Shown here piece after piece: positions 3,310 through 62,636 of a stretch of DNA of 64,000 bases. The notes beneath the pieces were generated by a model. The model had not been told where the DNA came from and did not search any database. It worked only from the letters and a program-made list of their open reading frames with translations. A program made the translations under genes and the position numbers. The stretch's first letter is position 1. Each line of letters starts with the position of its first letter. Source of the stretch: Macrostomum lignano (lineage: Eukaryota); contig NIVC01000137.1 in NCBI GenBank assembly GCA_002269645.1, positions 558,001 to 622,000 of the forward strand, written 5' to 3'.

Positions 3310-3393
3310 ACCGTTAACAAACAAAGCTAGCTGGGTTGCCAAGCACACAAACTGAATAGGCTCCACCCACCTGCCTTCGCGGTGGAACAAGCG

Positions 3394-16600: not shown

Positions 16601-17151
16601 TCAGCAGTGTCTAATTCATTGTCAGTAATTGTCTAATTCATTGTCAGCAGTGTCTAATTCATTGTCAGTATCTGTCTAATTCATTGTCAGCAGTGTCTAA
16701 TTCATTGTCAGCAGTGTCTAGTTCATTGTCAGTAATTGTCTAATTCATTGTCAGCAGTGTCTAATTCATTGTCAGCAGTGTCTAATTCATTGTCAGCAGT
16801 GTCTAATTCCTTGTCAGCAGTGTCTAATTCATTGTCAGCAGTGTCTAATTCATTGTCAGCAGTGTCTAATTCATTGTCAGCAGTGTCTAATTCATTGTCA
16901 GCAGTGTCTAATTCATTGTCAGTAATAGTCTAATTCATTGTCAGCAGTGTGTAATTCATTGTCAGTAATTGTCTAATTCATGGTCAGCAGTATCTAATTC
17001 ACTGTCAGTAATTGAGTGTCTAACTCATTGTCAGCAGTGTCTAATTCATTGTCAGCAGTGTCTAATTCATTGTCAGCAGTGTCTAATTCATTGTCAGCAG
17101 TGTCTAATTCATTGTCAGCAGTGTCTAATTCATTGTCAGCAGTGTCTAATT
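13696..17151. repeat. 21-bp minisatellite (CAGCAGTGTCTAATTCATTGT), ~3.45 kb, probably intronic to the GPCR
   Basis: Direct reading; ends 35 bp before the GPCR acceptor; source of the SNSLSAV ORFs. Confidence 0.98.
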
Positions 17152-17186
17152 CACAGAAATTTGTTTCGCTCAACTTGAACACACAG

Positions 17187-19386: not shown

Positions 19387-19851
19387 CCATGGAACACTAC
19401 ATACAGAGCATCGATCGGCACGCTAGAAGATTTTCTCGGCAAGCTTTTTGCAATAAACACGGGCATTGCTAGAACAAATATTAACTCAATTACTGTCTTC
19501 ATTTGTCCAATTTACCTAATAGATTCTCATGCCTCTGCTGAGAAGTAATTAAGTAAAATAAAAAATGGCTGAGGCAAAACGTGTAGCAGGTTAATGGACC
19601 GCCGACTGTGGAGGGCGCTGAGACAGGCTCGGTCTCTGCACCGTTCTTAGAATGCTGTTGAGTTGCTTGCCTACCCATGGTACCTCATAAGCAGTAATTT
19701 ATCATATTTATTGTCTTTTATAAGTCTGACAAAAATAGTTCTACCTGTTGTGACCCTAAACTTTGTCCTCGTGGACTGCTTTATTGGAGTCTGAGGATGA
19801 AAGACATTTGATCAACTATGTTTAACACTTTCCGGAATCGTGAATCGTGAA

Positions 19852-21605
19852 GTAGAGTAGAGTAGAGTACAGTAGAGTACAGTACAGTATAGTATAGTAC
19901 AGTAGAGTATAATAGAGAGAGTACAGTAGAGTAGAGTAGAGTAGAGTAGAGTAGAGAGAGTAGAGAGAGTAGAGTAGATTAGAGTAGAGTAGAGTAGAGT
20001 AGAGAGAGTAGAGAGAGTAGAGTAGATTAGAGTAGAGTAGAGTAGAGTAGAGTAGAGTAGAGTAGAGTAGAGTAGAGTAGAGTAGAGTAGAGTAGAGTAG
20101 AGTAGAGTAGAGTAGAGTAGAGTAGAGTAGAGTAGAGTAGTGTAGAGTAGAGTAGAGTAGAATAGGAGTAAAGTAGAGTAGATTAGAGTAAAGTAGAGTA
20201 GAGTAGAGTAGAGTAGAGTAGAGAGAGTAGAGAGAGTAGAGTAGATTAGAGTAGAGTAGAGTAGAGTAGAGAGAGTAGAGAGAGTAGAGTAGATTAGAGT
20301 AGAGTAGAGTAGAGTAGAGAGAGTAGAGAGAGTAGAGTAGATTAGAGTAGAGTAGAGTAGAGTAGAGTAGAGTAGAGTAGAGTAGAGTAGAGTAGAGTAG
20401 AGTAGAGTAGAGTAGAGTAGAGTAGAGTAGAGTAGAGTAGAGTAGAGTAGAGTAGTGTAGAGTAGAGTAGAGTAGAATAGGAGTAAAGTAGAGTAGATTA
20501 GAGTAAAGTAGAGTAGAGTAGAGTAGAGTAGAGTAGAGTAGAGTAGAGTAGAGTAGAGTAGAGTAGAGTAGAGTAGAGTAGAGTAGAGTAGAGTAGAGTA
20601 GAGTAGAGTAGAGTAGAGTAGAGTAGAGTAGAGTAGAGTAGAGTAGAGTAGAGTAGAGTAGAGTAGAGAGAGTAGAGAGAGTAGAGTAGATTAGAGTAGA
20701 GTAGAGTAGAGTAGAGAGAGTAGAGAGAGTAGAGTAGATTAGAGTAGAGTAGAGTAGAGTAGAGTAGAGTAGAGTAGAGTAGAGTAGAGTAGAGTAGTGT
20801 AGAGTAGAGTAGAGTAGAATAGGAGTAAAGTAGAGTAGATTAGAGTAAAGTAGAGTAGAGTAGAGTAGAGTAGAGTAGAGTAGAGTAGAGTAGAGTAGAG
20901 TAGAGTAGAGTAGAGTAGAGTAGAGTAGAGTAGAGTAGAGTAGAGTAGAGTAGAGAGAGTAGAGAGAGTAGAGTAGAGTAGAGTAGAGTAGAGTAGAGTA
21001 GAGTAGAGTAGAGTAGAGTAGAGTAGAGTAGAGTAGAGTAGAGTAGAGTAGAGTAGAGTAGAGTAGAGTAGAGTAGAGTAGAGTAGAATAGGAGTAAAGT
21101 AGAGTAGATTAGAGTAAAGTAGAGTAGAGTAGAGTAGAGTAGAGTAGAGTAGAGTAGAGTAGAGTAGAGTAGAGTAGAGTAGAGTAGAGTAGAGTAGAGT
21201 AGAGTAGAGTAGAGTAGAGTAGTGTAGAGTAGAGTAGAGTAGAATAGGAGTAAAGTAGAGTAGATTAGAGTAAAGTAGAGTAGAGTAGAGTAAAGTAGAG
21301 TAGAGTAGAGTAGAGAGAGGAGAGTAGAGTAGAGAGAGGAGAGTAGAGTAGAGAGAGGAGAGTAGAGTAGAGTAGAGTAAAGTAGAGTAGATTAGAGTAA
21401 AGTAGAGTAGAGTAGAGTAAAGTAGAGTAGAGTAGAGTAGAGAGAGGAGAGTAGAGTAGAGAGAGGAGAGTAGAGTAGAGAGAGGAGAGTAGAGTAGAGA
21501 GAGGAGAGTAGAGTAGAGTAGAGTAGAGTAGAGCAGAGTAAAGTAGAGCAGAGTGGAGTAGAGTAGAATTAAAGTAGTGTAGATTAAAGAGTAGAGTAGA
21601 GTAGA
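19852..21605. repeat. (GAGTA)n pentamer satellite with higher-order blocks
   Basis: Direct reading; recurrent variant block GAATAGGAGTAAAGTAGAGTAGATTAGAGTAAAG. Confidence 0.98.
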
Positions 21606-22163
21606 GAATATTACCCTCGTAGGAGTAGAATCCTAGCCCCCATATATTCAGAACTTATTGTGCTCAGCATCGGGCATTTAACAGTTATTTAGGACCCACT
21701 GCTGGCTTGAGTATAAGAGACCACCCATAGTGCCAGCAACTGTGGGACTGCTTTGCAAAAAAGTGGCCACTTACTGCACACACTGCAGATGATTAGACAG
21801 GTTACAGACAGGCAAGATAAAATAGAAAAAAGTAACTGTCACTCATTAAGGTTGACAAACCTGAGGGGGGGTACTGTAATGAACGGTTAATTATGGTACA
21901 ATTATTTCGCTCCATTAAGAGCTGATTGACCATGTTCTTATAGTTTTTCTTCTATTCGCTATGCATTGGATAGAATGACCCAATGATATTTGCTGTTTCA
22001 TCTAAGTCTCTGATTTTCACAGCTCAAAGGTGCACAGCGGCTGATGTCCCAGCGCATCGTAAAAATTGTCGTCGACGTCAAATGGCGCGTCAGGGAAGGT
22101 AATAATTACGAGTGTCAGGGCTGTAAACTAAGTGCTGGGGGGGGGGTCAGGTAGAGCTACATC

Positions 22164-28572: not shown

Positions 28573-31500
28573 TGTCTTTCCCAGTGTCTGCCTGTCCTTG
28601 TGTCTGTCTCAGTATCTGTCTTTCCCAGTGTCTGCCTGTCCTTGTGTCTGTCTCAGTATCTGTCTTCCCAGTGTCTGCCTGTCCTTGTGTCTGTCTCAGT
28701 ATCTGTCTTTCCCAGTGTCTGCCTGTCCTTGTGTCTGTCTCAGTATCTGTCTTCCCAGTGTCTGCCTGTCCTTGTGTCTGTCTCAGTATCTGTCTTTCCC
28801 AGTGTCTGCCTGTCCTTGTGTCTGTCTCAGTATCTGTCTTTCCCAGTGTCTGCCTGTCCTTGTGTCTGTCTCAGTATCTGTCTTTCCCAGTGTCTGCCTG
28901 TCCTTGTGTCTGTCTCAGTATCTGTCTTTCCCAGTGTCTGCCTGTCCTTGTGTCTGTCTCAGTATCTGTCTTTCCCAGTGTCTGCCTGTCCTTGTGTCTG
29001 TCTCAGTATCTGTCTTTCCCAGTGTCTGCCTGTCCTTGTGTCTGTCTCAGTATCTGTCTTTCCCAGTGTCTGCCTGTCCTTGTGTCTGTCTCAGTATCTG
29101 TCTTTCCAGTGTCTGCCTGTCCTTGTGTCTGTCTCAGTATCTGTCTTTCCAGTGTCTGCCTGTCCTTGTGTCTGTCTCAGTATCTGTCTTTCCAGTGTCT
29201 GCCTGTCCTTGTGTCTGTCTCAGTATCTGTCTTTCCCAGTGTCTGCCTGTCCTTGTGTCTGTCTCAGTATCTGTCTTTCCCAGTGTCTGCCTGTCCTTGT
29301 GTCTGTCTCAGTATCTGTCTTTCCCAGTGTCTGCCTGTCCTTGTGTCTGTCTCAGTATCTGTCTTTCCCAGTGTCTGCCTGTCCTTGTGTCTGTCTCAGT
29401 ATCTGTCTTTCCCAGTGTCTGCCTGTCCTTGTGTCTGTCTCAGTATCTGTCTTTCCCAGTGTCTGCCTGTCCTTGTGTCTGTCTCAGTATCTGTCTTTCC
29501 CAGTGTCTGCCTGTCCTTGTGTCTGTCTCAGTATCTGTCTTTCCCAGTGTCTGCCTGTCCTTGTGTCTGTCTCAGTATCTGTCTTTCCCAGTGTCTGCCT
29601 GTCCTTGTGTCTGTCTCAGTATCTGTCTTCCCAGTGTCTGCCTGTCCTTGTGTCTGTCTCAGTATCTGTCTTTCCCAGTGTCTGCCTGTCCTTGTGTCTG
29701 TCTCAGTATCTGTCTTTCCCAGTGTCTGCCTGTCCTTGTGTCTGTCTCAGTATCTGTCTTTCCCAGTGTCTGCCTGTCCTTGTGTCTGTCTCAGTATCTG
29801 TCTTTCCAGTGTCTGCCTGTCCTTGTGTCTGTCTCAGTATCTGTCTTTCCCAGTGTCTGCCTGTCCTTGTGTCTGTCTCAGTATCTGTCTTTCCCAGTGT
29901 CTGCCTGTCCTTGTGTCTGTCTCAGTATCTGTCTTTCCCAGTGTCTGCCTGTCCTTGTGTCTGTCTCAGTATCTGTCTTTCCCAGTGTCTGCCTGTCCTT
30001 GTGTCTGTCTCAGTATCTGTCTTTCCCAGTGTCTGCCTGTCCTTGTGTCTGTCTCAGTATCTGTCTTTCCCAGTGTCTGCCTGTCCTTGTGTCTGTCTCA
30101 GTATCTGTCTTTCCCAGTGTCTGCCTGTCCTTGTGTCTGTCTCAGTATCTGTCTTTCCCAGTGTCTGCCTGTCCTTGTGTCTGTCTCAGTATCTGTCTTT
30201 CCCAGTGTCTGCCTGTCCTTGTGTCTGTCTCAGTATCTGTCTTTCCCAGTGTCTGCCTGTCCTTGTGTCTGTCTCAGTATCTGTCTTTCCCAGTGTCTGC
30301 CTGTCCTTGTGTCTGTCTCAGTATCTGTCTTTCCCAGTGTCTGCCTGTCCTTGTGTCTGTCTCAGTATCTGTCTTTCCCAGTGTCTGCCTGTCCTTGTGT
30401 CTGTCTCAGTATCTGTCTTCCCAGTGTCTGCCTGTCCTTGTGTCTGTCTCAGTATCTGTCTTTCCCAGTGTCTGCCTGTCCTTGTGTCTGTCTCAGTATC
30501 TGTCTTTCCCAGTGTCTGCCTGTCCTTGTGTCTGTCTCAGTATCTGTCTTTCCCAGTGTCTGCCTGTCCTTGTGTCTGTCTCAGTATCTGTCTTTCCCAG
30601 TGTCTGCCTGTCCTTGTGTCTGTCTCAGTATCTGTCTTTCCCAGTGTCTGCCTGTCCTTGTGTCTGTCTCAGTATCTGTCTTTCCCAGTGTCTGCCTGTC
30701 CTTGTGTCTGTCTCAGTATCTGTCTTTCCCAGTGTCTGCCTGTCCTTGTGTCTGTCTCAGTATCTGTCTTTCCAGTGTCTGCCTGTCCTTGTGTCTGTCT
30801 CAGTATCTGTCTTTCCAGTGTCTGCCTGTCCTTGTGTCTGTCTCAGTATCTGTCTTTCCAGTGTCTGCCTGTCCTTGTGTCTGTCTCAGTATCTGTCTTT
30901 CCCAGTGTCTGCCTGTCCTTGTGTCTGTCTCAGTATCTGTCTTTCCCAGTGTCTGCCTGTCCTTGTGTCTGTCTCAGTATCTGTCTTTCCCAGTGTCTGC
31001 CTGTCCTTGTGTCTGTCTCAGTATCTGTCTTTCCCAGTGTCTGCCTGTCCTTGTGTCTGTCTCAGTATCTGTCTTTCCCAGTGTCTGCCTGTCCTTGTGT
31101 CTGTCTCAGTATCTGTCTTTCCCAGTGTCTGCCTGTCCTTGTGTCTGTCTCAGTATCTGTCTTTCCCAGTGTCTGCCTGTCCTTGTGTCTGTCTCAGTAT
31201 CTGTCTTTCCCAGTGTCTGCCTGTCCTTGTGTCTGTCTCAGTATCTGTCTTTCCCAGTGTCTGCCTGTCCTTGTGTCTGTCTCAGTATCTGTCTTCCCAG
31301 TGTCTGCCTGTCCTTGTGTCTGTCTCAGTATCTGTCTTTCCCAGTGTCTGCCTGTCCTTGTGTCTGTCTCAGTATCTGTCTTTCCCAGTGTCTGCCTGTC
31401 CTTGTGTCTGTCTCAGTATCTGTCTTTCCCAGTGTCTGCCTGTCCTTGTGTCTGTCTCAGTATCTGTCTTTCCAGTGTCTGCCTGTCCTTGTGTCTGTCT

Positions 31501-33799
31501 CAGTATCTGTCTTTCCCAGTGTCTGCCTGTCCTTGTGTCTGTCTCAGTATCTGTCTTTCCCAGTGTCTGCCTGTCCTTGTGTCTGTCTCAGTATCTGTCT
31601 TTCCCAGTGTCTGCCTGTCCTTGTGTCTGTCTCAGTATCTGTCTTTCCAGTGTCTGCCTGTCCTTGTGTCTGTCTCAGTATCTGTCTTTCCAGTGTCTGC
31701 CTGTCCTTGTGTCTGTCTCAGTATCTGTCTTTCCAGTGTCTGCCTGTCCTTGTGTCTGTCTCAGTATCTGTCTTTCCCAGTGTCTGCCTGTCCTTGTGTC
31801 TGTCTCAGTATCTGTCTTTCCCAGTGTCTGCCTGTCCTTGTGTCTGTCTCAGTATCTGTCTTTCCCAGTGTCTGCCTGTCCTTGTGTCTGTCTCAGTATC
31901 TGTCTTTCCCAGTGTCTGCCTGTCCTTGTGTCTGTCTCAGTATCTGTCTTTCCCAGTGTCTGCCTGTCCTTGTGTCTGTCTCAGTATCTGTCTTTCCCAG
32001 TGTCTGCCTGTCCTTGTGTCTGTCTCAGTATCTGTCTTTCCCAGTGTCTGCCTGTCCTTGTGTCTGTCTCAGTATCTGTCTTTCCCAGTGTCTGCCTGTC
32101 CTTGTGTCTGTCTCAGTATCTGTCTTTCCCAGTGTCTGCCTGTCCTTGTGTCTGTCTCAGTATCTGTCTTCCCAGTGTCTGCCTGTCCTTGTGTCTGTCT
32201 CAGTATCTGTCTTTCCCAGTGTCTGCCTGTCCTTGTGTCTGTCTCAGTATCTGTCTTTCCCAGTGTCTGCCTGTCCTTGTGTCTGTCTCAGTATCTGTCT
32301 TTCCCAGTGTCTGCCTGTCCTTGTGTCTGTCTCAGTATCTGTCTTTCCCAGTGTCTGCCTGTCCTTGTGTCTGTCTCAGTATCTGTCTTTCCCAGTGTCT
32401 GCCTGTCCTTGTGTCTGTCTCAGTATCTGTCTTTCCCAGTGTCTGCCTGTCCTTGTGTCTGTCTCAGTATCTGTCTTTCCCAGTGTCTGCCTGTCCTTGT
32501 GTCTGTCTCAGTATCTGTCTTTCCCAGTGTCTGCCTGTCCTTGTGTCTGTCTCAGTATCTGTCTTTCCCAGTGTCTGCCTGTCCTTGTGTCTGTCTCAGT
32601 ATCTGTCTTTCCCAGTGTCTGCCTGTCCTTGTGTCTGTCTCAGTATCTGTCTTTCCCAGTGTCTGCCTGTCCTTGTGTCTGTGTCAGTATCTGTCTTTCC
32701 CAGTGTCTGCCTGTCCTTGTGTCTGTCTCAGTATCTGTCTTTCCCAGTGTCTGCCTGTCCTTGTGTCTGTCTCAGTATCTGTCTTCCCAGTGTCTGCCTG
32801 TCCTTGTGTCTGTCTCAGTATCTGTCTTTCCCAGTGTCTGCCTGTCCTTGTGTCTGTCTCAGTATCTGTCTTTCCCAGTGTCTGCCTGTCCTTGTGTCTG
32901 TCTCAGTATCTGTCTTTCCCAGTGTCTGCCTGTCCTTGTGTCTGTCTCAGTATCTGTCTTTCCCAGTGTCTGCCTGTCCTTGTGTCTGTCTCAGTATCTG
33001 TCTTTCCCAGTGTCTGCCTGTCCTTGTGTCTGTCTCAGTATCTGTCTTCCCAGTGTCTGCCTGTCCTTGTGTCTGTCTCAGTATCTGTCTTTCCCAGTGT
33101 CTGCCTGTCCTTGTGTCTGTCTCAGTATCTGTCTTTCCCAGTGTCTGCCTGTCCTTGTGTCTGTCTCAGTATCTGTCTTCCCAGTGTCTGCCTGTCCTTG
33201 TGTCTGTCTCAGTATCTGTCTTTCCCAGTGTCTGCCTGTCCTTGTGTCTGTCTCAGTATCTGTCTTTCCCAGTGTCTGCCTGTCCTTGTGTCTGTCTCAG
33301 TATCTGTCTTTCCCAGTGTCTGCCTGTCCTTGTGTCTGTCTCAGTATCTGTCTTTCCCAGTGTCTGCCTGTCCTTGTGTCTGTCTCAGTATCTGTCTTCC
33401 CAGTGTCTGCCTGTCCTTGTGTCTGTCTCAGTATCTGTCTTCCCAGTGTCTGCCTGTCCTTGTGTCTGTCTCAGTATCTGTCTTTCCCAGTGTCTGCCTG
33501 TCCTAGTGTCTGTCTCAGTATCTGTCTTTCCCAGTGTCTGCCTGTCCTTGTGTCTGTCTCAGTATCTGTCTTCCCCAGTGTCTGCCTGTCCTTGTGTCTG
33601 TCTCAGTATCTGTCTTTCCCAGTGTCTGCCTGTCCTTGTGTCTGTCTCAGTATCTGTCTTTCCCAGTGTCTGCCTGTCCTTGTGTCTGTCTCAGTATCTG
33701 TCTTTCCCAGTGTCTGCCTGTCCTTGTGTCTGTCTCAGTATCTGTCTTTCCCAGTGTCTGCCTGTCCTTGTGTCTGTCTCATTATCTGTCTTTCCCAGT
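28573..33799. repeat. 44-bp satellite array, ~5.2 kb (CCCAGTGTCTGCCTGTCCTTGTGTCTGTCTCAGTATCTGTCTTT)
   Basis: Highly homogeneous; variants are mostly single-base losses in the TTT/CCC runs. Source of the 1668-1749 aa pseudo-ORFs. Confidence 0.99.
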
Positions 33800-34044
33800 G
33801 TACGCGAAGGCGTATTCAGCATGCCAGTGAAGTATGAGACAGACTAGGCCCATGGGCTAAGGTCTGCGATGCTTCACGCCTGCCCCTATCTTCAGCAGGT
33901 CAAGGCTGGTGGGAGGTCTGCACCCTCTATTTGCCTCTGGCAGCCGCAGACCCCCCCCCCCACGCTGTCTCGCAAGTCGACCCAGGGTACTCGTCCCCGC
34001 GTGTGTTCAAGGCAGTCCCTAGGGCTGCTGGACAGACTGGGCTC
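33800..34044 (+). ncRNA. Predicted HDV-like self-cleaving ribozyme at the retrotransposon 5' end
   Basis: Hand-folded. P1 GTACGCG(33800-06)/CGCGTGT(33998-34004) with G1-U wobble; P2 GACCCA(33979-84)/TGGG-c-TC(34038-44); P3 GGG(33985-87)/CCC(33995-97); L3 TACTCGT; P1.1 C33990-G34005 and A33989-T34006; P4 hairpin GCAGTCC-cta-GGGCTGC; J4/2 CAGAC(34033-37). Confidence 0.75.
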
Positions 34045-34319
34045 CGGCGCTGGCGACCCTATCCAGTGGCTTCGGCCGAATTTGGGTATGCGGGTCTGGC
34101 TCGCCAACCTGCAGGCCGTGGTACTGCTCAACGTACTCTCTAATGCCTAAGGTGTTGACCGTGCCGATGGGCTGGAAGGCCGGGGAGTAGTCCGGTCGCA
34201 AGCGGTCCCCCTCCTGGTGTCGGGCCAGCCTTGAGGGTGCTATTGGCCTACTGCCCGGTCAGGTGGAGCGGCCGGGTGGGTACCGCGCCCCTTTGAGGGT
34301 AGCCCACCAACCTTTTATC

Positions 34320-35824
34320 ATGGCCTTCGAGCCGACTATGGATAAACAAGCTATTTCTAGGGACGGGGACCCTTCTAAACCCCAACCTCAGTCCGAAGGA
34401 CCGGCCGGCCCTGCTGGCAGATCCCAACCGACTGATTCAACTGTGGCAAAGGAAGGACCGGCTGGCTCTGCTGGCAGATCCGACCAGAGCTACCAAACTC
34501 AAAATACCCTAAGACCTGCCAGCTCCGCTGGTGGATCTAAGGGAACCGCGAGCTCTGAGCCTAAAGGACCGGCCAAATCTGGCAGATCCGATGAAGCTCA
34601 GCGGGCTCGGCTTGAGCGCAAACGCGCTAAACAACGCGCCAAAAGGCAGGCCAAGAAGGGAGCTGCGGGGGCCAAAGCGGCGGCGTCCACCATGGATGCT
34701 GAAGCGACTGGAGTCCCAAGGCAACCAGGCGGGCCGGCCGGTGGAAGCTCCAGTAGTTCAGCGGCGGCGCTCCCTGGAGCTGCTGCCGCGGCTGCTGAGG
34801 CCGAAACCACGGCGCAACAAATGGCCACTGCCAACAAGGAGGTTCCTTCGGGAGCTACCTTTGCGGCGAAGGCCAAGGCCAAAATCCCGGGAGTGATCAT
34901 CCAAGGTCGCGACCAGGACTGGACCACTGATCAGCTTCAAAAAGTGTGGAGTGCTGTTGACTCCTATCTGATTGAGCTGACTGTCGAGGAGGGAATCTCC
35001 ATCGGCGTTGAGCGGATGGTGCTGCGAAGCACATTCGTTCTTATTGCTCCTAGCAGCGAGGAGGACGCTCGGCGGCTGCTCCAGCGGCTACCGACGGTCT
35101 CCTTGGATGCTGACCTTGGTGGAGCTCTTTTTCTTCGCGAGGGCCAGCGTCCAAAGACGATACCCTATGTGGTTTTCGTCCCTGCTAAGAGCACCGCAGC
35201 TGGACCAGACGTTATTCGCCGGGTCCTACTGCGTCTGAACCCCGACCTCCCTGCTAGTGGACTGGTGTATCACCGCAAAGTCCGCAGGGGGGAGACGGGC
35301 AACTCAATTGTCCTCGGCCTTTCCAGCACTTGGGCGAGTCGGTACCCTAATGGATCCTCTTTCCAGCTGGGTGCCCTCAAGCTCAAGTTGCGCCGAGGAA
35401 AGTCTGCCAAAGGGAAGGCTACTGCCAACCCCGGCATCTCCGGCAAGAGCGGGGCGCAGTCTAAGGCCCAAGGAAAGGCGCAAGCCGATCCCAAAGCCAA
35501 AGCTGCATCTCGCCCCTCTGCTAGCAGCAGTTCGGCGACCGCGGTAACGGCTCCGGCCGAGCCCCGGGAACCAAACCTGCCAGTCGGAGAAGGAGTTGAG
35601 GACGAGGCCGGGTCTTCGGAATCCGAGCTCTCCTCGGCCACCTTGGTGGGGTCTGAAGGTAAAGATGCAGGTGAGGAAGCTTCCTCCATCCTGTCATCGG
35701 AGCCTGAGGACTCTGCTGGGGGGCCGGTGGGGGTGAGGAGGCCATGGACGTCGACCAACTCCCATCTCCCAGTCAAGCCCCAGCGGCCTGGGACGAGGAC
35801 GATCTGTTGTCCAAGTCTCCTTGA
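34320..35824 (+). CDS. Retrotransposon ORF1 (gag-like, no zinc knuckle; central region recalls DUF4780 of LOA-type ORF1s)
   Basis: ATG 34320; basic low-complexity N-terminus; globular core WTTDQLQKVW...RRVLLRLNPDL. The true end is probably ...DEDDLLSKSP* (TGA 35822-35824) after a -1 shift in a G-run near 35720-35733. The domain name is from recall, not a search. Confidence 0.75.
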
Positions 35825-35863
35825 TGGCCCTGGGCTCTAGCCAGATATTGCATTTAATACAGT

Positions 35864-38800
35864 ATGACTAAGCTCCACGCTGCCAAAGGAGCGACATTCT
35901 GTCTGCAAATAAATTTACAGCATTGCGTATCTGCGTCAGTAAATCTGATGAAGATTGCTGAGCTGTACAGGCCAGGCCTCATCCTGATCCAGGAACCCTG
36001 GATGCGCAACGGTAAGTTGCCCAACATTCCCTCTGGCTACTCTGATTTTTATGTGTGTGGCCCGGGGAACAGCCGCCCTAGAGCGGCTATCCTCGCTGCT
36101 AGCCATCTCCAGGCTTGGCTGAGGACTGATCTCTCTGATGGAGACCTTTGCGTCATCCAATCTAATCATTTCTCTCCGCGTACGTGTCTTGTTGCCTCGG
36201 TTTATATCCCAGGCGACAGAGACCCTGCTCCCGAGAGTTTACTGCGCCTTGCGCAGTACTGCGAGTCCCAGAACGCTGAGCTGTGCTTAGGGGGCGACCT
36301 CAACGCGCACCACAAGCACTGGGGCAGCAAAGATACCAACACTAGAGGAGAGGAGCTTCTGGCCCTCATCTCTAACACAAACCTCATGCTCTGCAACCGC
36401 GGCAGCACTCCTACCTTTAATAATGGCAGATGGACCGAGGTCCTCGACGCCACACTCGTTACCCCAAGACTCTTTGACAGAGTCAAGGAGTGGAGAGTCT
36501 GGTCTGAGGAGCCCTCCCTGTCTGACCACTGCTTTATCGCCTTTAATATCGCGGACACTAAAACCCAGTCTCCGATCACTTGGAGACGCAATATCCGCAA
36601 CACTGATTGGGCGGCCTACAAGGCTGCCCTTGATCTGCACCTGCAGGAACTCACGGACTTACGTCCGATTGAGACCTGCGAGGATGTGGATCATATGGCT
36701 GAGACGCTGACAGGTTGCATTATTGCAGCCTACGAAGCGGCTTGTCCTGCTCGCGCCTACAGAGGCAAGACCTCGGCGCCGTGGTGGAACCCGGAGCTGG
36801 GGAAACTCAGGCGGAAGGCCAAAAGCCTTCATCGCCGTGCCATGAAGACCGGAAACCCGGAGGACATGGAGCTTTTCCGGCAAGCCTCCCGCAATTTCAA
36901 ATCTGAAGTGCGCAAGGCCAAGGAATGTAAGTGGCGCCAATTCTGCAATGAATTGGATCAAGACAGACCTACTTCTAGGCTTGTCAAGGCCCTTACAATG
37001 GACAAAATGTCCAAATTAGCCATGATAAAAAAGATGATGGCTCTCTTACTAAAGACCCTGAAGAAGTGCTTCAGCATATGCTTAGCACATTCTTCCCGAG
37101 GGTACCTACTGCTAGACCGGAGCCCAACCATTCGATGGATGGAGCCACCCTAGCGGCGGGCATTGTCACTGAAGACCTAATCGCTCGTGCGGTCAGAACC
37201 TTCAAACCCTTCAAATCTCCTGGACCTGATGGTATCTACCCTGTTCTCCTTCGTGAAGCAGCCAAGATACCCTCGTTCCTGAGACTCACCCGCAATCTTA
37301 TGCGGGCCTCTATCCAGCTGGGATACGTTCCCAAAAGCTGGACTGAAGCTCGAGTAGTCTTTATTCCCAAACCTGGGAAGGGTGACTACCAAAGCGTCAA
37401 GGCCTTCCGGCCAATTAGCTTAACGTCAGCAATGCTTAAGCTCACTGAGAGGCTTATTCTCTGGCGGCTGCTCTCCTGCGAGCTGACAGCGATGCCCCTC
37501 AGCAATAATCAGCACGCCTTCCGTACCGGGAGGTCGACTGACAGCGCCCTGCATGCGATTGTCGAAAAGATTGAACGGGCGGTACTGGGTGACGGTTACG
37601 CCCTGGCTCTCTTTCTTGACATTGTTGGCGCCTTCGACAACGTTATCTTTGAAGCGTTTCAGAGGGCCCTTCAAAATCGCAAAGCTCATGCTACCCTCAT
37701 ACGGTGGATCATGTACATGATCTCCAACCGTACGGTCACTGCCCAACTTCTTGGGCAAACTGCCTCCACCAGAGTCTGTAAGGGTGGACCCCAAGGCGGA
37801 GTCCTCACCCCGACGCTCTGGAACCTGGTCATGGACGCTCTTCTGAGTGACTCCCGACCTGACCCCGTCTTCAAAGTCGGGTATGCTGATGACGTCACGG
37901 CCATTGTGGCAGGACCGTCTCCCAGCACGCTCAGGGATCTGATGCAGAGCTTTATCCGCAAAGCAGAATCCTGGGCCAATGACAATGGTTTGGAACTCTC
38001 TGAGCCCAAAACCGTTGCCATTATGTTTACCAGCAGACTACGCTGGAACATACGTCCTCTGCAGCTCTACGGCAGAGATATTGCCTTCGCGCACCAGACC
38101 AGATGTCTCGGGGTCACACTTGACCACCGGCTCAACTGGTCCTTCCACGTGAAAGCAAAAGCTAAGCGTGCCTCAGCCATCCTGGCCCAGCTCCGACGAG
38201 CACTTGGCACTTCTTGGGGTCTATCCCCAAAGCGGCTTTGGTGGATCTATACTTCCGTAGTTAGACCTGCCATTACGTACGCCTCTGTTGTCTGGGTTAG
38301 CGCTACCCAGGTCAAAAGCCATGCAGACCTGCTCAACACGATCCAAGGCAGAGCGTGTAGGCTCATCTGCAACGCCACCAGGTCCACGCCCTTTGCTGGC
38401 ATGGGGGCCTTTCTTAATCTTCCGCCTCTTGACCTCTTCATCAGGGGTGAGGCGGCTAGAACGACGCGGCGTCTAATTGATGCCGGCGTCAAATTCATTT
38501 ACATGAGAGCACCTGCTAAGCGGAACCTTGTCCCGCATAGCGATCTGTGCCTCAACTTTCTCAACGAGTGTCAGGCCAATCGCGTCTTCACCGATGGCAT
38601 TGCCTCAACGCTCAACCTGAGACAGCGCTACTCCGTAGCTATCGACTCGCGCGATAACATCAATGACCATTGGAACCCTGGTGAGCTTCATTGCTACACC
38701 GACGGTTCTAAGCAGTCAGCCAACACCGGCTTTGGTGTTGGAATCTTTCTGAACGGGAGGGTCATCGCTACCCACGCTCAATACACTGGGGTCAACTCCA

Positions 38801-39602
38801 GTGTTTTCCAAAATGAAGTTCTGGCCATCAGCTCCTGCACTGCAGAGCTTCTCGCCACTGGCGTTACTGGTAAGAACATCATTTTCCATTCGGACAGCCA
38901 AGCTGCCTTGCACGCCATCAGTGGCTGCAGCACCAACTCTGCTACAGTCCTTGACTGTATCAAACTCCTCAATGTGTTGGGTTCCGCCAACAAAATTACC
39001 CTTAAGTGGGTTCCGGGGCATGTGGGGATCCGAGGAAATGAGTTGGCTGACACCCTTGCAAAGTTGGTGCCTCCGGCTCCTCTCTCGGCCCCGAACCTCT
39101 TGTCCCGATTCCTGGCTGTGTCATCGACTCGCGCATCAAAGCGTGGATCAGGACTCAGCACCGCTCGACTTGGGCGAACCGCACGAACTGCAGGCAATCC
39201 AGAGGCGCTGTCCCTCAGCCCTCTCACCAGCTCCGGAAGCTCCTCTTGCGCCTCTCGCGCAGAGACATCCGGGCTGCCACCATGACCCTCTCTGGTCACG
39301 GCTGCTTCTCCAGGCACCAGTACCTGCAGGGCAACGCCACCAACGCCACCTGTAGTTTCTGCAACTCAGGTGACGAAACCGCTGAGCATTTCGTCAGCAT
39401 CTGTCCCGCCTTCACGCGGGCCAGACTCACTTACCTCGGGCCACACACATCTATTACTGAAGCGTGCAAACCCGAAAACTTTAATCAGCTCATGCGCTAC
39501 CTTCGGGCCACCCGCAGGGCTGAACTCTCCTTTCCAGAGAGCACCATAGCTGCTGGCGACACTGGGGGACCTCCCTGGGCGGCGCCAACCCTCCGTCCAT
39601 AG
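35864..39602 (+). CDS. Retrotransposon ORF2: AP endonuclease, reverse transcriptase, RNase H, CCHC finger (two apparent -1 frameshifts)
   Basis: APE: QINLQH, LIQEPW, GGDLNAHH, SDHCFI. RT: KSPGPDG, FRPISL, QHAFR, LDIVGAFD, GGPQGGVL, YADD. RNase H: YTDGSK, QNEVLAI, SDSQAAL, WVPGH, GNELAD. CSFC...ETAEHFVSICP. Frame shifts at ~37030 and ~39066. Confidence 0.92.
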
Positions 39603-39689
39603 CGACGCGTCGGCCGTTCAGGGACTAGCGGAATGGGCGCCCGCGCCTTCCCGCTGTGTCCCCTCCGGGACAGCCCTGCAGCTAAGTCA

Positions 39690-39912
39690 AGTGTCTGCCT
39701 GTCCTTGTGTCTGTCTCAGTATCTGTCCCAGTGTCTGCCTGTCCTTGTGTCTGTCTCAGTATCTGTCCCAGTTTCTGCCTGTCCTTGTGTCTGTCTCAGT
39801 ATCTGTCCCAGTGTCTGCCTGTCCTTGTGTCTGTCTCAGTATCTGTCCCAGTGTCTGCCTGTCCTTGTGTCTGTCTCAGTATCTGTCTTTCCCAGTGTCT
39901 GCCTTTCCTAGT
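39690..39912. repeat. Continuation of the satellite as a 40-bp variant
   Basis: Units read ...ATCTGTCCCAGT (TTTC missing) for four copies, then a 44-bp unit and decay. Confidence 0.95.
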
Positions 39913-40779
39913 GTCTGTCGCGGTATGTCTTTTCCTGTGTGTGTCTGTCCTAATTTATTTTTCCCTAGCCTCGGTATTTCACCCCATTTATTCTTTTCTA
40001 GCTGTCTTACTTGTGCTCTTTATCCGTCTCAGTTTCTCATTATTACCTGTCTGTCTGTCATTCTCCCCCAGCAAATTATTAACTTCGAGGTCGCAGTATT
40101 AATCCAAAGTTAACCATGCCTTATCCCAATCAAAGCATCAGTCACACACGAAACCGGCTTGCATCCAATGACTGGGAGCAGCTACCTCAGTGTATTTGCT
40201 TTGCTCTTATCAGCAAAATGTGGACTTGCGGCCTGTCTTTCGGAAAGGGCTCGACTTCTTTTGTAAACAAGCACATGCGCACACACTCACACTGCCCTAG
40301 GAGAAAATGAAAGGCGAAACGAAGAAAGCGACAGGAAGTGAAGAAAAAATAGCGAACGGGAGCGGCTGAGCCTGATGCTGGGAGTCTCAAAGCCTAACAT
40401 GTAATCAGCCGGGAACAACACGCATTCAACCGATGTTAAAAATCTTTTCTTACTTTGACTTTTGCTCGCCAATTTTTTTCGATCATTCACTCTTCTGAAA
40501 AGTCAGGGCATCAGGTGGCCTAAGTAAGTTGCCATGGAGTTTACAAAACCAAAATCTGGCTAGGAAATCAAGGTTTTTCTACATTGAACCAGTTCGATAT
40601 GTATGAGCAAATCAGATTAAAGAATTGTTTAATTTAAACTGGACATACAAGACTAAGAATTTGTTGAAATATTCACTGACACTTTTTTTCGATTTTTTAC
40701 TTACGCTCGTATCAATACTTTGACCATGAAACGGCTCAGAATCTCGTGGTTTTGGTTGACAAAGAACAAATAAGACAAA

Positions 40780-50387: not shown

Positions 50388-53201
50388 ATGAAAGGGCTGA
50401 GAATGCTTCGTCTGGTTGGTGCTTTTATCTTCGCAGCAAGTCTGCGTTTCGCAGTCGCCTCAGAGACGAGACTGCCTGACAACATCAACTTCAACAGCAA
50501 AGTGGCCAGCTTGACCGCGCTGAGCCGGGACTTCCCGCCGCCACCTGCTGGAGATCCGAGCGGCTATTATCGAGCCAGCCTGCGCCCGTACCAGACTCAG
50601 CTCGAAGGATTCTTCGTGGTTGACCGGTTGGGCACCATTTCCGCTAATCGAGACATCGATAGGGACGAGATCTGCTCAAAGCTAGACTGCTGCGGCAGCC
50701 TCGAGTGCCGGATGGAGTTCATCGCCTCAGTGACGGTACGTCCAGCCGACTCAGCACGAACGCTCACCTTCCAGCTTGTGCTCATTGATGAGAACGACGA
50801 GGCGCCAAGCTTCCCCAACTCTGGGCCAATCGACATTCGAGAAGACGCTGTGGTTGGCTCGGACAATGTCAAACTGCCTGCAGCAGTAGACAAAGATTCC
50901 CCAGCTTTCTCAGTCAAGGCGTACAATCTCACTGACCCGACTGGTACTTTTGCTGTGGTGCTGAAATCCGGTGTTCCGCATATAAAACTGCTGCGCCCCC
51001 TAGACAGAGAGACCGAGCCGCAGTACCAGGTAACACTGCGAGCCACTGACGGCGAGCACGAGGGTTCCGTGGTCATCACAGTTCGAGTAGGCGACGTCAA
51101 CGACAATCCTCCAATTTTTGACCAGGGAACGTTTGTAAAGTCAGAATTCCCCGAGAACAGAAGAGTCAACAACGACCCAATCAGTCCGCTGACCGCTAGT
51201 GACAAGGATGCAGGGCGGAACGCGAAAGTCATCTACCGCATCGCTGCGGTGGATCCGCCGACCTTAAACAGCTTTTTCGATGTTCGTATTGAAAACGGTT
51301 TCTGGGGCCTCTTTCTTAATCAGAGCTTGGACTACGAGGTACCCCAGCAGCGAACTGCCAAGGTGTTTATTGAAGCTCGCGATCAAGGCAGTCCTCCACA
51401 ATCATCGACGTGTACAGTCAGCATCAGCGTCACTGATATCAACGACAATGAGCCGGTGATTAAAGAGCTGGCGAACTATCAACTTGATGAACATCGTCCG
51501 CCGGAGGTTCTGGTCAAGGCCATCCAGGTAACTGATGCAGATGCTGTGTCTATCGGCAAGGTGCAGTGCATGCTTGAGTCAAATCCCAAGTTTAAGTTGG
51601 AAAGGAACACAATATCCAGTCCCACTGACATTGTGGAGCAAGCAACCTACAACATGTACAGCACCACCACCTTCGACTATGAGGTAGCCCAGGAGGAAAA
51701 GGTGGACATTAAGTGTCTGGACAATGCATCGCCAGTAAGGACCACGCGACAGTCGTTCATCATACCGATTCGTGAGACGAACGATGACCCACCGAAATTC
51801 ATCTCAAAAAGCTACTTCAAGCAGGTGGATGAAGACCTTTCAGTGAACAGGCAAGCGTTAAAGGTGAGCGCAACCGATCGCGATAAAGGCTTCTACGGCG
51901 AAATCGAATACTTGCTTGACGAGATCGGGCAGCGCAACTTCACTGTCGATAGCGAAGGCAGCATCAAAGTCAAAGTGCCATTGGACCGTGAGACCGCAAA
52001 AAACCTGCGCTTCAACGTCATAGCTAGAGACCGAGGCAACCTGTCGGACACAGCGACAGTTGTCATTGAGCTTCTCGACGTCAACGACAATGACCCCTAC
52101 TACACCGGTCCCTTGACTGCCAGCGTGCAGGAAAACAGCCCGCCAGGCACCCCGGTAGCTCAAGTGTCTTTCGCCGACCCGGATTTAGGCGAGAATGGCA
52201 CGGTCGATTTCGATCTGAGCAGCAGCGAAGAGCATCGCCCAGTCAACGAGTACTTCAGCCTGCATCGCAACGGCACCCTGACGGTCAGAAAGCCAATCGA
52301 CAGGGAGACTTGGTCAAGCATGCCCGTGGCGCTAACCGCCTGGGACATGGGATTGCGAAGGAGAAGCTCAACGGCTGTGCTGACAGTCAACATCGGCGAC
52401 GTCAACGACTGTCCACCAACGGTGGTTAAGCCACGACCTGGAGCACTACTAGGCATCGGCAATGTCTTCTACACAAACGTACCCCGCAAGACCCTTCTGA
52501 TAACTGTCGAGGCTGAGGACAAAGACGCTGGAGAGAATCGTACAGTCGACTACCGCCTGCTGGCGTCCAATGCCAGCTCCCTCTTCGACATCGACAGGCA
52601 GAGTGGCGAGATTCACTCGGTGTGGCGGCCCGAGGAGGCTCCCCCGATGCCCGGGCTGTACTACCTCACCGTGCAGGTGACCGACCGAGGCAGCCGTGTG
52701 CGACTGAGCAGCGAGACCACATTCTACGTGCGACTGACAGCTCCGCCTGAGGCTCAATTCGCCTCGGCCGGCATCAGCGGCCTCATCATCCTGATTCTCA
52801 TCATCGCCGGCACGGTGGTCATCGCTGTTGGCCTCATCGTGGCGATTTGCTACGTGCGCGGCCGGGCAGACAGTCCGGACGACCTTGGCGCTGGCGTCGC
52901 CGAGGCAGGCGCCTCCGATCTGGCCGAGGCGCGCTTGAAGATGCGCGCTAACGCTGAGGATTTCCATGGCTACCACCGGGAGAGCCCCGTGCCGCCCTAC
53001 GATGCCCGACTGCTGCACCAGCAGCAGCACCAGTGCCAGCACCAGCTGCAGCACCTGTTGCAGCATCAGCATCAGCCGCCTCACGGCTCCTTGAAGCGGC
53101 ACCAGCAGGATTATTACGCCTGGTCGCGGCCGGGCTCCCCGCTGACAATGATGTCGTTGCAGCAGCAGCAGCAGCAACAACACGGAGACGACATTAAGCA
53201 G
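50388..53201 (+). CDS. Delta-type protocadherin, large first coding exon (signal peptide, 7 cadherin repeats, TM, start of Q/H-rich tail)
   Basis: DRDEIC...CC in EC1; linkers DENDEAP, DVNDNPP, DINDNEP, ETNDDPP, DVNDNDP, DVNDCPP; DRE/DYE motifs; TM GISGLIILILIIAGTVVIAVGLIVAICYV; donor CAG|GTGAGA at 53202. Later exons not established. Confidence 0.92.
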
Positions 53202-54173
53202 GTGAGACAACCGGGCCGGTAGACAGGGAGGGGCAGGAACCGGAATGAGTGGTAATTATTAACACCCATACAGCTGAAGGGCCGTGTTTGTTCTGCGTGA
53301 CTTTGCTAATTAAGCAGCGGGAGGTCCGGCATATTCCGGCGACTCTGAACAGCCCCCGAGTACCCTCCAGAGCGGCTTCGGATCTTGGCTAGAAGCAGAA
53401 GTTCGTGCTGTACATTAATTTTCAGTCCACTTCAGGGCCAGCGTGAGATCTCAGACGAGCTCGAGTTGCAGCTCCGCCTCACATCCAGCCTCGACCCCTG
53501 GCGAGTATTCAGACTTGCTAAAAAAGCCATGCGGCTACTCGGATAGGGCGCGGGCAACTCAAACTCAACTTAACACCCGAGACAGGGCCTTAAGGGTTGA
53601 AGTGAAAAGAGAGAGAGGGAAAGCCTGAGCTGTATGGCTCTGGCGTGTTTTGAGTCAGGATTTGTCACGCCTGTGCACCTGATTTAATTAATTCCTTCCT
53701 TCCTCCCCTTCGGCCCCACCAACCCAGCCAGCCCAAAAACAACCGAGCAAAGCAAAGAAATTTCGAATCGCCTCTCCTGCTTGCCTCTTCCCCCGTCTCC
53801 ACTTTCTATTGAGACGTTTCTTCCTGCGTAGCAATTGCATCCGAGTGTCGAGAGGTCTTTGGCAAAATTTTTATTTTCACTTTTTTTTAGGCTGAAAATG
53901 GGCAGGCCAGAAAAACATATCAGACTTTATTGAGCTCTCGCTTCAACTGCGGACTGAGCAGAATTTATGCGAGGTCACGAACAAATTTGCTCAATTTTGC
54001 AGGTCAGTCTGGAGTGAAGCCAAAAATACTCAACTGCAAGGGTGACACGTTGATTGATTAGGTGTAACGGCAATTAATGACTAGAATCATCTTCAGGCTT
54101 TTTATTATTGGATTAAGATTGTGGCAATCTGATAAGGAACCTGACAGACATTCAAAATTTTACGGAAGGCTAT

Positions 54174-57100: not shown

Positions 57101-57245
57101 TCCTGACTGATACTCGGATATCCTTCTGACAGCTACTCTGACACCCTCATGACAGATACTCTGTCACCCTCCTGACAGCTACTCTGACACCCTCATGACA
57201 GCTACTCTGACACCCTCCTGACAGCTACTCTGACACCCTCCTGAC
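54174..57245. repeat. 23-bp minisatellite (CTGACAGCTACTCTGACATCCTC), ~3.1 kb
   Basis: Direct reading. Confidence 0.98.
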
Positions 57246-62190: not shown

Positions 62191-62636
62191 CCTACTGTCT
62201 GCTTTCTCTCAATCAGTTTATGTGTCTTCTTTCTCCTATCTTCTAGCTGTTTTTTTGACCTCAGTAAAAAATGAATGCTTCTTATTCATGTCTTGATATC
62301 TCCATTTCATATGTGACCTTTAAAGCCGATTGCTTTTAAAAAAGATACAAAATCAAGGAGTTTTGCCGGCGCTCATTTGTCTTTGATCTGTGATAAAAAA
62401 TTTTTGACCCTCAAAGCTTCGGTCAGAAGGATTCAAAATTCAATGCGGTTCAGATCTTTCAAGTCGAGCCAAAGTCAACAGCTGACGCGTTCGGATGCAG
62501 TTGCTTGGCTAGGAAAAACTTTAATCAAGACTTTGGCAATAAGTAAGTTTAAACAATTAAAGCATTGATATTTTGGGGTCAAAGGTTACATAAATTATAT
62601 TTAGTTTGAGATAAAAAGGTTGGTGATAGACACATC

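What the first reader, a model, noticed from the sequence alone, without database searches (positions are those of the whole stretch)
33800..34090. HDV-like self-cleaving ribozyme whose cut site falls at the 5' junction of a LOA-like retrotransposon
Seen in sequence: every element of the HDV nested double pseudoknot can be paired. P1 is GUACGCG/CGCGUGU (7 bp, opening with the required G-U wobble), and its 5' strand is the first 7 nt at the satellite/element junction. P3 GGG/CCC closes a 7-nt L3, UACUCGU (canonical UCCUCGY). The unusual A in L3 is matched by a U after P1' (GU instead of GG), so P1.1 keeps two pairs, which looks like a compensatory change. P4 is a clean hairpin, J4/2 is CAGAC (CNRA pattern; candidate catalytic C34033), and P2 has 6 bp with one bulge. 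An alternative register uses C34077-GAA and UGGGU 34083-87. The ~170-nt J1/2 folds on itself (GTGAAGTAT/ATGCTTCAC, CAGAC/GTCTG, GGTCTGC/GCAGACC). Established: HDV-like ribozymes process the 5' ends of R2, RTE and some other non-LTR elements out of read-through transcripts. Inference: this element frees itself from satellite read-through RNA without needing its own promoter. I do not recall this being described for this family in a flatworm-like genome.
Basis: partly seen in the sequence, partly recalled or inferred. Interest (0 to 1): 0.88.

Follow-up and report, generated by a model that had tools for sequence, protein, structure and literature searches.

The report
HDV-like ribozyme heading a flatworm LINE
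The first 245 bases of a Macrostomum-type LINE retrotransposon fold into a hepatitis-delta-like self-cutting RNA whose predicted cut lies exactly at the element's 5' end, a known trick of such elements seen here in a new lineage and backed by compensating base changes in one relative.

Summary
A 5.9-kb APE-RT-RNase H LINE (33800-39689, Macrostomum lignano-type DNA) sits in a 44-bp satellite. Its first 245 nt can form every helix of the HDV nested double pseudoknot.

- **Uniqueness:** my own descriptor finds one such core in the 128 kb of both strands. Its only P1 partner is 33800, the junction.
- **Chance:** shuffles give 0.04 cores per 128 kb. One of 40,000 shuffled 5' UTRs places P1 at the junction.
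- **Comparative evidence:** the only relative with retrievable DNA (Logan contig L001, ORF2 57% identical) has the same architecture at the same place, and the contig begins at the predicted +1 G. Of 17 compared pairs, 33 of 34 cells pair and 7 pairs changed on both sides (P1 2, P2 3, P1.1 2).
- **Registers:** the C34077 register is not conserved; C34033 is the candidate catalytic base.
- **Untested or unclear:** cleavage itself, read-through transcription, absence of a promoter, and the 'LOA' label. Rfam models do not match. A 5' hairpin competes with P1. This copy's ORF2 needs two frame changes.

Verdict: a real, probably functional HDV-like 5'-processing ribozyme, and a new member of a known kind.

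The parts
28573..33799 (.). 44-bp satellite array into which the element is inserted (upstream flank)
   Evidence: TRF: 119 copies, 99% matches
33797..33799 (+). Target-site duplication AGT, 5' copy. The 3' copy is at 39690-39692. GT at 33800-01 also matches the satellite (microhomology).
   Evidence: Read. The start of L001 aligns to 33800.
33800..33806 (+). P1 5' strand GUACGCG. Predicted scissile bond 33799/33800. First bases of the element.
33800..33815 (+). 5'-terminal hairpin GUACGC-GAAG-GCGUAU, mutually exclusive with P1
   Evidence: Part of the minimum-energy fold. -7.0 kcal/mol. Three compensated pairs against L001.
33807..33978 (+). J1/2, a 172-nt self-contained structured insert. 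The invariant stretch AGGCCCAnGGGCUAAGGUCU lies at 33846-33865.
   Evidence: z = -2.2. 12 of 40 consensus pairs compensated against L001.
33979..33984 (+). P2 5' strand GACCCA
33985..33987 (+). P3 5' strand GGG
   Evidence: Invariant in L001
33988..33994 (+). L3 UACUCGU. U33988 and G33993 are the candidate reverse wobble. A33989 and C33990 are the 5' strand of P1.1.
   Evidence: L001 has UCUCCGU
33995..33997 (+). P3 3' strand CCC
33998..34004 (+). P1 3' strand CGCGUGU
34005..34006 (+). J1/4 GU, the 3' strand of P1.1
   Evidence: Both pairs changed on both sides in L001
34007..34032 (+). P4 region; hairpin stem 34011-34029
   Evidence: L001 has a different, longer hairpin at the same place.
34033..34037 (+). 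J4/2 CAGAC; C34033 is the candidate catalytic cytosine
   Evidence: CNRA pattern. L001 has GCUGC here.
34038..34044 (+). P2 3' strand UGGGCUC
34045..34319 (+). Rest of the 5' UTR, with blocks conserved in L001 (34180-34195, 34243-34255, 34268-34283)
34320..35840 (+). ORF1 (506 aa from the ATG), no Pfam domain
35864..39602 (+). ORF2: AP endonuclease, reverse transcriptase, RNase H and a weak C-terminal zinc motif. Needs two frame changes, near 37012-37093 and 39060-39183.
39603..39689 (+). 3' UTR ending CCCTGCAGCTAAGTCA, without poly(A). L001 has the same terminus.
39690..39926 (.). Satellite resumes as a 40-bp variant (downstream flank)

Best explanation
Bases 33800-34044 encode an HDV-like (nested double pseudoknot) self-cleaving ribozyme. 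It forms the 5' end of a 5.9-kb APE-RT-RNase H LINE of a Macrostomum-type flatworm.

**Proposed mechanism.**
1. The element is transcribed from upstream, here through the satellite or a host transcript.
2. P1 (33800-06 with 33998-34004) pairs across a closed 172-nt J1/2 domain.
3. P2, P3, P1.1 and P4 complete the fold.
4. C34033 in J4/2 acts as general acid, and the chain breaks between 33799 and 33800.
5. The released element RNA begins with G33800 and a 5'-OH.

**What is shown.** The fold can form, it is very unlikely by chance, it is kept by compensating changes in a diverged relative, and in both elements it starts at the element's first base.

**What is inferred.** The chemistry, the cut site in real RNA, the source of transcription, and any further role in translation start or protein binding.
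For: **In the window.**
- All helices verified.
- One core in 128 kb, with its only P1 partner at the junction.
- Shuffles: 0.04 cores per 128 kb; 1 of 40,000 5' UTR shuffles places P1 at the junction.

**In relative L001** (ORF2 57% identical).
- P3 GGG/CCC and L3 UCUCCGU lie at the homologous place.
- P1 is GCCUGC/GCAGGC, P2 is CUCAGA/UCUGAG, and P1.1 is CU/AG.
- 17 pairs were compared: 97% of cells pair and 7 pairs changed on both sides. With partners slid by 1-3 columns, 25-47% pair and 0-2 pairs are compensated.
- The L001 contig starts at the +1 G and aligns without gaps to window 33800.
- Both elements share the 3' terminus.
- Only 45 of 20,000 shuffles of the L001 5' UTR place a loose match at its start.

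**Literature.**
- P1-P1' distances of 23 to over 700 nt, P2 mismatches and 6-7 bp P1 stems are normal in R2 ribozymes (PMC3774820).
- P1.1 with A-U or non-standard pairs occurs in fast cellular HDV ribozymes (PMC13635239).
Against: - No Rfam HDV-family model matches, even at E <= 10 on the core alone.
- The minimum-energy nested fold does not choose P1: -103.6 against -94.6 kcal/mol with P1+P3 forced and pseudoknots not scored.
- The first 6 bases prefer a local hairpin of -7.0 kcal/mol.
- In L001 the J4/2 reads GCUGC, so the CNRA pattern is not kept, and the pair at the cut site is G-C rather than G.U.
- Comparative support rests on one relative, which was found with a descriptor that demands pairing.
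- More distant relatives (35-47% ORF2 identity) show no such motif.
- This copy's ORF2 needs two frame changes.
- There are no RNA data.
Confidence: 0.75

Rival explanations
1. A conserved structured 5' UTR with another job (internal ribosome entry, or binding of the element's own proteins) has an HDV-like topology but no longer cleaves, or never did. The 5' end would then be set by an internal promoter.
For: - The whole 5' UTR, not only the core, carries conserved blocks and covarying helices.
- The 5' hairpin competes with P1.
- J4/2 and the pair at the cut site differ between the two elements.
- Rfam models are silent.
- L1Tc combines a promoter and a ribozyme in the same bases (PMC3383444).
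Against: - The pairs kept by double changes are exactly those that define the catalytic fold, including the 2-bp P1.1.
- P1 starts at the first base of the element in both cases.
- A fold used only for binding would not need its P1 to begin at +1.
Confidence: 0.13
2. The family's ribozyme is real, but in this copy it is an inert relic. The copy is dead, sits in untranscribed satellite, and never makes RNA.
For: - ORF2 needs two frame changes.
- P2 carries an A.C mismatch or bulge that L001 lacks.
- There is no evidence of transcription.
Against: - The frame changes may be long-read indel errors.
- The ribozyme helices are otherwise intact.
- P2 mismatches occur in about a third of R2 ribozymes (PMC3774820).
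- ORF1 fragments 87-98% identical occur in other M. lignano predictions, so the family is young.
Confidence: 0.1
3. Chance: a GC-rich 5' UTR happens to satisfy a permissive pattern chosen by eye.
For: - The descriptors were written after the fact.
- The loose descriptor hits 6-7% of shuffled UTRs somewhere.
- It gives 14 sense and 34 antisense hits in 425 kb of relatives.
Against: - Requiring P1 at the element start gives 2.5e-5 with the strict descriptor and 0.2-0.4% with the loose one.
- The same fold recurs at the same place in L001 with different bases in 9 of 17 pairs.
Confidence: 0.02

Closest known systems
R2 retrotransposon 5' ribozymes (Drosophila, Bombyx and many animals, including a predicted one in the planarian Schmidtea; PMC3774820)
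   Same: - HDV-like double pseudoknot in the 5' UTR.
- Cut at or near the element's 5' end.
- Long and variable J1/2 (23 to over 700 nt between P1 and P1').
- P1 of 6-7 bp, tolerated P2 mismatches, variable P4.
- 5' junctions with microhomology when the cut is at the element end.
   Different: - R2 has a restriction-like endonuclease and one ORF, and inserts only in 28S rDNA, where it is co-transcribed by Pol I.
- This element has an AP endonuclease, two ORFs and RNase H, and sits in a satellite.
Baggins and RTE 5' HDV-like ribozymes (Ruminski et al. 2011, as summarised in PMC6765202 and PMC3774820)
   Same: - APE-type, non-site-specific LINEs said to lack their own promoters.
- They are freed from host or upstream co-transcripts by a 5' HDV-like ribozyme that cuts at the element's end.
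   Different: - Arthropod elements.
- No sequence similarity was tested here, because the primary paper is not held.
- Whether this element belongs to the LOA clade, where I recall Baggins being placed, was not tested.
L1TcRz of Trypanosoma cruzi L1Tc and the ingi clade (PMC3185411, PMC4035085)
   Same: An APE-RT-RNase H LINE with an HDV-like ribozyme formed by its first bases.
   Different: L1TcRz is compact (77 nt), overlaps an internal promoter (Pr77), and acts on polycistronic transcripts. Here the ribozyme spans 245 nt with a large J1/2 domain.
Twister-variant ribozymes at the 5' end of Perere-3 LINEs in Schistosoma mansoni (PMC8501958)
   Same: A flatworm APE-type LINE that trims its own 5' end with a ribozyme.
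   Different: A different ribozyme class (twister, not HDV-like) and a different element clade (RTE, from my own knowledge).

Membership tests
HDV-like self-cleaving ribozymes | Strand order P1-J1/2-P2-P3-L3-P3'-P1'-J1/4-P4-J4/2-P2', giving a nested double pseudoknot | tested here: met
   All helices can be paired in that order. L001 has the same order.
HDV-like self-cleaving ribozymes | Helices supported by compensating changes in relatives | tested here: met
   One relative only: 7 of 17 pairs changed on both sides and 33 of 34 cells pair. Slid controls give 0-2 such pairs.
HDV-like self-cleaving ribozymes | L3 with a 5' U and a G near its 3' end (reverse wobble), and two L3 bases pairing with J1/4 (P1.1) | tested here: met
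   UACUCGU in the window and UCUCCGU in L001. P1.1 is AC/GU against CU/AG.
HDV-like self-cleaving ribozymes | Unpaired catalytic C at the start of J4/2 (search pattern CNRA) | tested here: inconclusive
   The window has C34033-AGA. L001 has G-C228-UGC, so a C is present but the trailing A is not.
HDV-like self-cleaving ribozymes | G at +1 closing P1, usually as a G.U wobble | tested here: met
   G33800.U34004. L001 has G1-C194.
HDV-like self-cleaving ribozymes | Match to a curated covariance model of the family (Rfam HDV, CPEB3, drz-Agam and others) | tested here: not met
   No such match at gathering score, nor at E <= 10, in the window or in L001. These models score no pseudoknot. I expect a 172-nt insert to be penalised, but I did not measure that.
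HDV-like self-cleaving ribozymes | Divalent-ion-dependent self-scission 5' of +1, leaving a 5'-OH | not testable with these tools
   Needs in vitro transcription and cleavage, or mapping of 5'-OH ends.
Ribozyme-terminated non-LTR retrotransposons | The ribozyme's +1 base is the first base of the element | tested here: met
   The satellite/element junction is at 33799/33800, with 2 nt of ambiguity. The L001 contig starts at the homologous base.
Ribozyme-terminated non-LTR retrotransposons | The element is a non-LTR retrotransposon (endonuclease plus reverse transcriptase, target-site duplication, no LTRs) | tested here: met
   Pfam Exo_endo_phos_2, RVT_1 and RNase_H. Target-site duplication AGT.
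Ribozyme-terminated non-LTR retrotransposons | Transcribed as part of a longer upstream transcript | not testable with these tools
   No RNA data. The only hint is that same-strand host exons flank the region.
LOA clade of LINEs | Reverse-transcriptase phylogeny groups it with LOA, Baggins and Lian | not tested
   No reference sequences were on hand. The names of database hits are uninformative.
LOA clade of LINEs | ORF2 domain order APE-RT-RNase H | tested here: met
   From my own knowledge this order is shared with the I, Ingi, Tad and Nimb clades, so it does not decide the clade.

The most novel reading that the evidence does not exclude
The ribozyme may be one state of a conserved RNA switch.
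- The first six bases can pair either with P1' (the cutting fold) or with a nearby segment (33810-15; L001 11-17), forming a 5'-terminal hairpin.
- Both partners have tracked the changes in the 5' strand.
- A large J1/2 domain with an invariant 20-nt hairpin cap is built into the ribozyme.

After cleavage the 5' end could snap into the hairpin. That would dismantle the ribozyme and expose the conserved J1/2 and downstream blocks for binding of the element's proteins or for cap-independent translation of ORF1.
Probability: 0.2. Interest if true: 0.65.

Novelty: new member of a known kind. Interest (0 to 1): 0.45.

Why it matters
- It extends 5' HDV-like processing to an APE-RT-RNase H LINE of a free-living flatworm. 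The flatworm cases I found in the held papers are a predicted planarian R2 ribozyme and twister variants in schistosome LINEs.
- It gives a ready, mutation-testable example with a very long, conserved J1/2 domain and a competing 5' hairpin. That is useful for studying how such ribozymes fold during transcription.
- It offers a simple rule for annotating full-length copies in Macrostomum genomes: they should start at the +1 G.
- It does not change the general picture of how LINEs free their RNA.

Tried and rejected
- **Rfam:** no HDV-type match at gathering score on the whole window, nor at E <= 10 on 33600-34400, on the core alone, or on L001.
- **Other copies in the window:** none by blastn.
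- **Other copies through ORF1:** two protein searches found only chimeric UniProt predictions from M. lignano without DNA. Exact look-ups found nothing.
- **Exact-pattern scans:** the core against metagenomes, and the J1/2 invariant stretch against prokaryote genomes and viral contigs, gave 0 hits.
- **Protein-guided scan of metagenomes:** 80 loci, all distant (24-43% identity in the endonuclease region, many apparently from termite-gut samples, judging by contig names), without a credible motif. The viral-contig scan gave none.
- **P0004 (59% identical):** no DNA could be returned.
- **Seven further relatives with upstream sequence (L003, L004, L085-L089):** no HDV-like motif with my descriptor. 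L002 is cut inside ORF1.
- **Alignment:** MAFFT misaligned the cores, so I aligned helix segments by structure.
- **C34077 register:** rejected, because the homologous L001 bases (CUAAACCGGGU) cannot pair with its P2 5' strand.
- **Thermodynamics:** neutral. With P1+P3 forced, the nested fold is 9.0 kcal/mol (window) and 3.6 kcal/mol (L001) above the minimum-energy fold, before any credit for P2 and P1.1.
- **Clade:** could not be assigned. ORF1 has no Pfam domain.

Full report
**What is at the coordinates.**
- The 44-bp satellite (28573-33801 by TRF, 119 copies) stops at the finding's start and resumes at 39690.
- Between them lies a 5.9-kb element with four parts:
  - a 520-nt 5' UTR;
  - ORF1 (34320-35840), with no Pfam domain;
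  - ORF2 (35864-39602), with AP endonuclease, reverse transcriptase, RNase H and a weak zf-RVT motif;
  - an 87-nt 3' UTR without poly(A).
- ORF2 needs two frame changes, near 37012-37093 and 39060-39183. The copy is either dead or carries assembly indels.
- The target-site duplication is AGT (33797-99 and 39690-92). GT at 33800-01 also matches the satellite, so the sequence alone places the 5' end within 33800-33802.
- ORF1 hits only Macrostomum lignano predictions, at 87-98% identity.

**Checking the fold.**
  - P1 33800-06 with 33998-34004 (7 bp, opening G.U then U.G);
  - P3 GGG/CCC around L3 UACUCGU;
  - P1.1 C33990-G34005 and A33989-U34006;
  - P4 hairpin 34011-34029;
  - J4/2 C34033-AGAC;
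  - P2 33979-84 with 34038-44, with one bulge or an A.C mismatch.
- J1/2 (172 nt) folds on itself as described; z = -2.2.

**Is it more than chance?** I wrote a descriptor with these requirements:
- a 3-bp Watson-Crick P3;
- a 7-nt L3 of the form U.C..G.;
- a 7-nt P1' ending in U;
- a J1/4 that begins with G and completes P1.1;
- a P4 hairpin;
- a J4/2 of the form CNRA;
- a P2 of at least 5 bp, or 6 bp with one bulge.

Results:
- It finds exactly one core in both strands of the window, at 33985. The only P1 partner within 300 nt upstream is 33800.
- Block shuffles of the window give 0.04 cores per 128 kb.
- Of 40,000 dinucleotide shuffles of the 5' UTR, 18 have a core, 5 also a P1, and 1 a P1 within 3 nt of the junction.
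- A looser descriptor gives 71 of 20,000.
- Both descriptors were written after seeing the candidate, so these figures are generous. They still leave little room for chance.

**Comparative evidence.**
- No second copy lies in the window.
- ORF1 searches gave no DNA.
- The reverse-transcriptase search found many relatives on 4-6.5-kb assembled contigs.
- The closest one with DNA is L001, a Logan contig of run ERR14788467 with ORF2 57% identical. It holds a complete element: 547 nt upstream of ORF1, the same 3' terminus CCCTGCAGCTAAGTCA, then about 530 nt of unrelated flank.
- Its first base aligns without gaps to window 33800.
- At the homologous place it has these elements:

| Element | L001 sequence and position |
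|---|---|
| P3 / L3 | GGG-UCUCCGU-CCC (176-188) |
| P1' | GCAGGC (189-194), complementary to contig bases 1-6, GCCUGC |
| J1/4 | AG, pairing with L3 bases CU |
| P4 | a long, different hairpin |
| P2 | CUCAGA (170-175) with UCUGAG (232-237) |

- On a structure-guided alignment of the helix segments there are 17 pairs, and 33 of 34 cells form standard pairs. Seven pairs changed on both sides: P1 2, P2 3, P1.1 2. With partners slid by 1-3 columns, 25-47% of cells pair and 0-2 pairs are compensated.
- Only 45 of 20,000 shuffles of the L001 5' UTR give a loose match with P1 at its start.
- Caveats: this is one relative, and it was found by a rule that demands pairing. The position, the start of the contig and the changed bases are nevertheless independent of the window.

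**Which register.**
The homologous L001 bases cannot pair with its P2 5' strand.
- In the window, C34077 lies in the stem of a C(UUCG)G hairpin (my reading).
- I keep C34033. L001 has C228 in GCUGC at that place, so the C is kept but the CNRA pattern is not.

**Points against, or unexplained.**
- Rfam's HDV-family models are silent even at E <= 10. They do not score pseudoknots. I expect a 172-nt insert to be penalised, but I could not measure their sensitivity to ribozymes of this build.
- Nested minimum-energy folds do not choose P1. The gap is 9.0 kcal/mol in the window and 3.6 kcal/mol in L001, before any credit for P2 and P1.1.
- The first six bases can instead form a 5'-terminal hairpin: 33800-15 at -7.0 kcal/mol, and L001 1-17 at -8.1 kcal/mol. 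Its 3' strand has also tracked the changes, with three compensated pairs.
- In L001 that same segment can alternatively close the J1/2 domain with a 9-bp helix.
- This may be an inhibitory fold, a post-cleavage state, or a leftover of a 5' extension of the kind Eickbush proposed (PMC3774820). I cannot tell which.
- The pair at the cut site is G.U in the window but G-C in L001.
- More distant relatives (35-47% ORF2 identity, plus 80 metagenome loci) show no credible motif. The loose descriptor gives 14 sense and 34 antisense hits in 425 kb, which is noise.

**Comparison with what is known.**
- HDV-like ribozymes at the 5' ends of non-LTR elements are established for R2, R4, Dong, Baggins, RTE and L1Tc. 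A planarian R2 ribozyme has been predicted (PMC3774820, PMC6765202, PMC3185411).
- The features that look odd here are within the published range:
  - P1-P1' separations of 23 to over 700 nt, 6-7-bp P1 stems, P2 mismatches and variable P4 (PMC3774820);
  - P1.1 helices with U:A and even C:U or U:U pairs in fast cellular ribozymes (PMC13635239).
- Schistosome LINEs use twister variants instead (PMC8501958).
- No held paper links Macrostomum with a ribozyme.
- The 'LOA' label was not tested. From my own knowledge, the domain order is shared with several clades.

**Verdict.**
- This is a new member of a known kind: an HDV-like 5'-processing ribozyme of a Macrostomum LINE family, with C34033 as the likely catalytic base and 33799/33800 as the likely cut.
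- Cleavage, upstream transcription and the absence of a promoter remain to be shown.
- Confidence is about 0.75 that the family's sequence self-cleaves at that site. It is higher (about 0.85) that the conserved fold is real.

Noticed in passing
window 33800-33815; L001 1-17 and 153-161: A 5'-terminal hairpin uses the P1 5' strand and is kept by three compensated pairs. In L001 its 3' strand can instead close J1/2 with a 9-bp helix. L001 155-161 (GCUCUGC) is a near copy of the P1 5' strand. This may be a switch, or a trace of a 5' extension.
   Followed up: partly
window 33846-33865 (L001 47-66): The stretch AGGCCCAnGGGCUAAGGUCU is invariant except for the one base marked n, between elements whose ORF2 is only 57% identical. 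It caps a covarying hairpin inside J1/2 and may be a protein-binding site.
   Followed up: partly
window 34180-34195, 34243-34255, 34268-34283: Further 5' UTR blocks downstream of the ribozyme are conserved with L001, for example the hairpin CCGG-GGAGUAGU-CCGG. Their function is unknown.
   Followed up: no
window 39674-39689; L001 5946-5961: Both elements end in CCCTGCAGCTAAGTCA with no poly(A) or simple repeat. This is probably the 3' recognition sequence for reverse transcription.
   Followed up: no
window 37012-37093 and 39060-39183: ORF2 changes frame twice relative to the intact ORF2 of P0005. This is either a dead copy or long-read indel errors.
   Followed up: partly
window 1-64000: The window is crowded with more than 20 unrelated tandem arrays, with periods of 4-63 bp and up to 5 kb each. 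Examples: 13681-17153, 19851-21606, 54169-57245 and 58298-62200.
   Followed up: no
window 3382-4368 (+) and 50388-53222 (+): Open frames on the same strand as the LINE encode a Peptidase_M28 domain and five or more cadherin repeats. These are host exons, so the LINE could be reached by same-strand host transcription.
   Followed up: partly
L087 954-2684, L088 780-2126, L004 927-2582: ORF1 of more distant relatives carries Pfam DUF4780. ORF1 of the window and of L001 does not reach any Pfam threshold.
   Followed up: no
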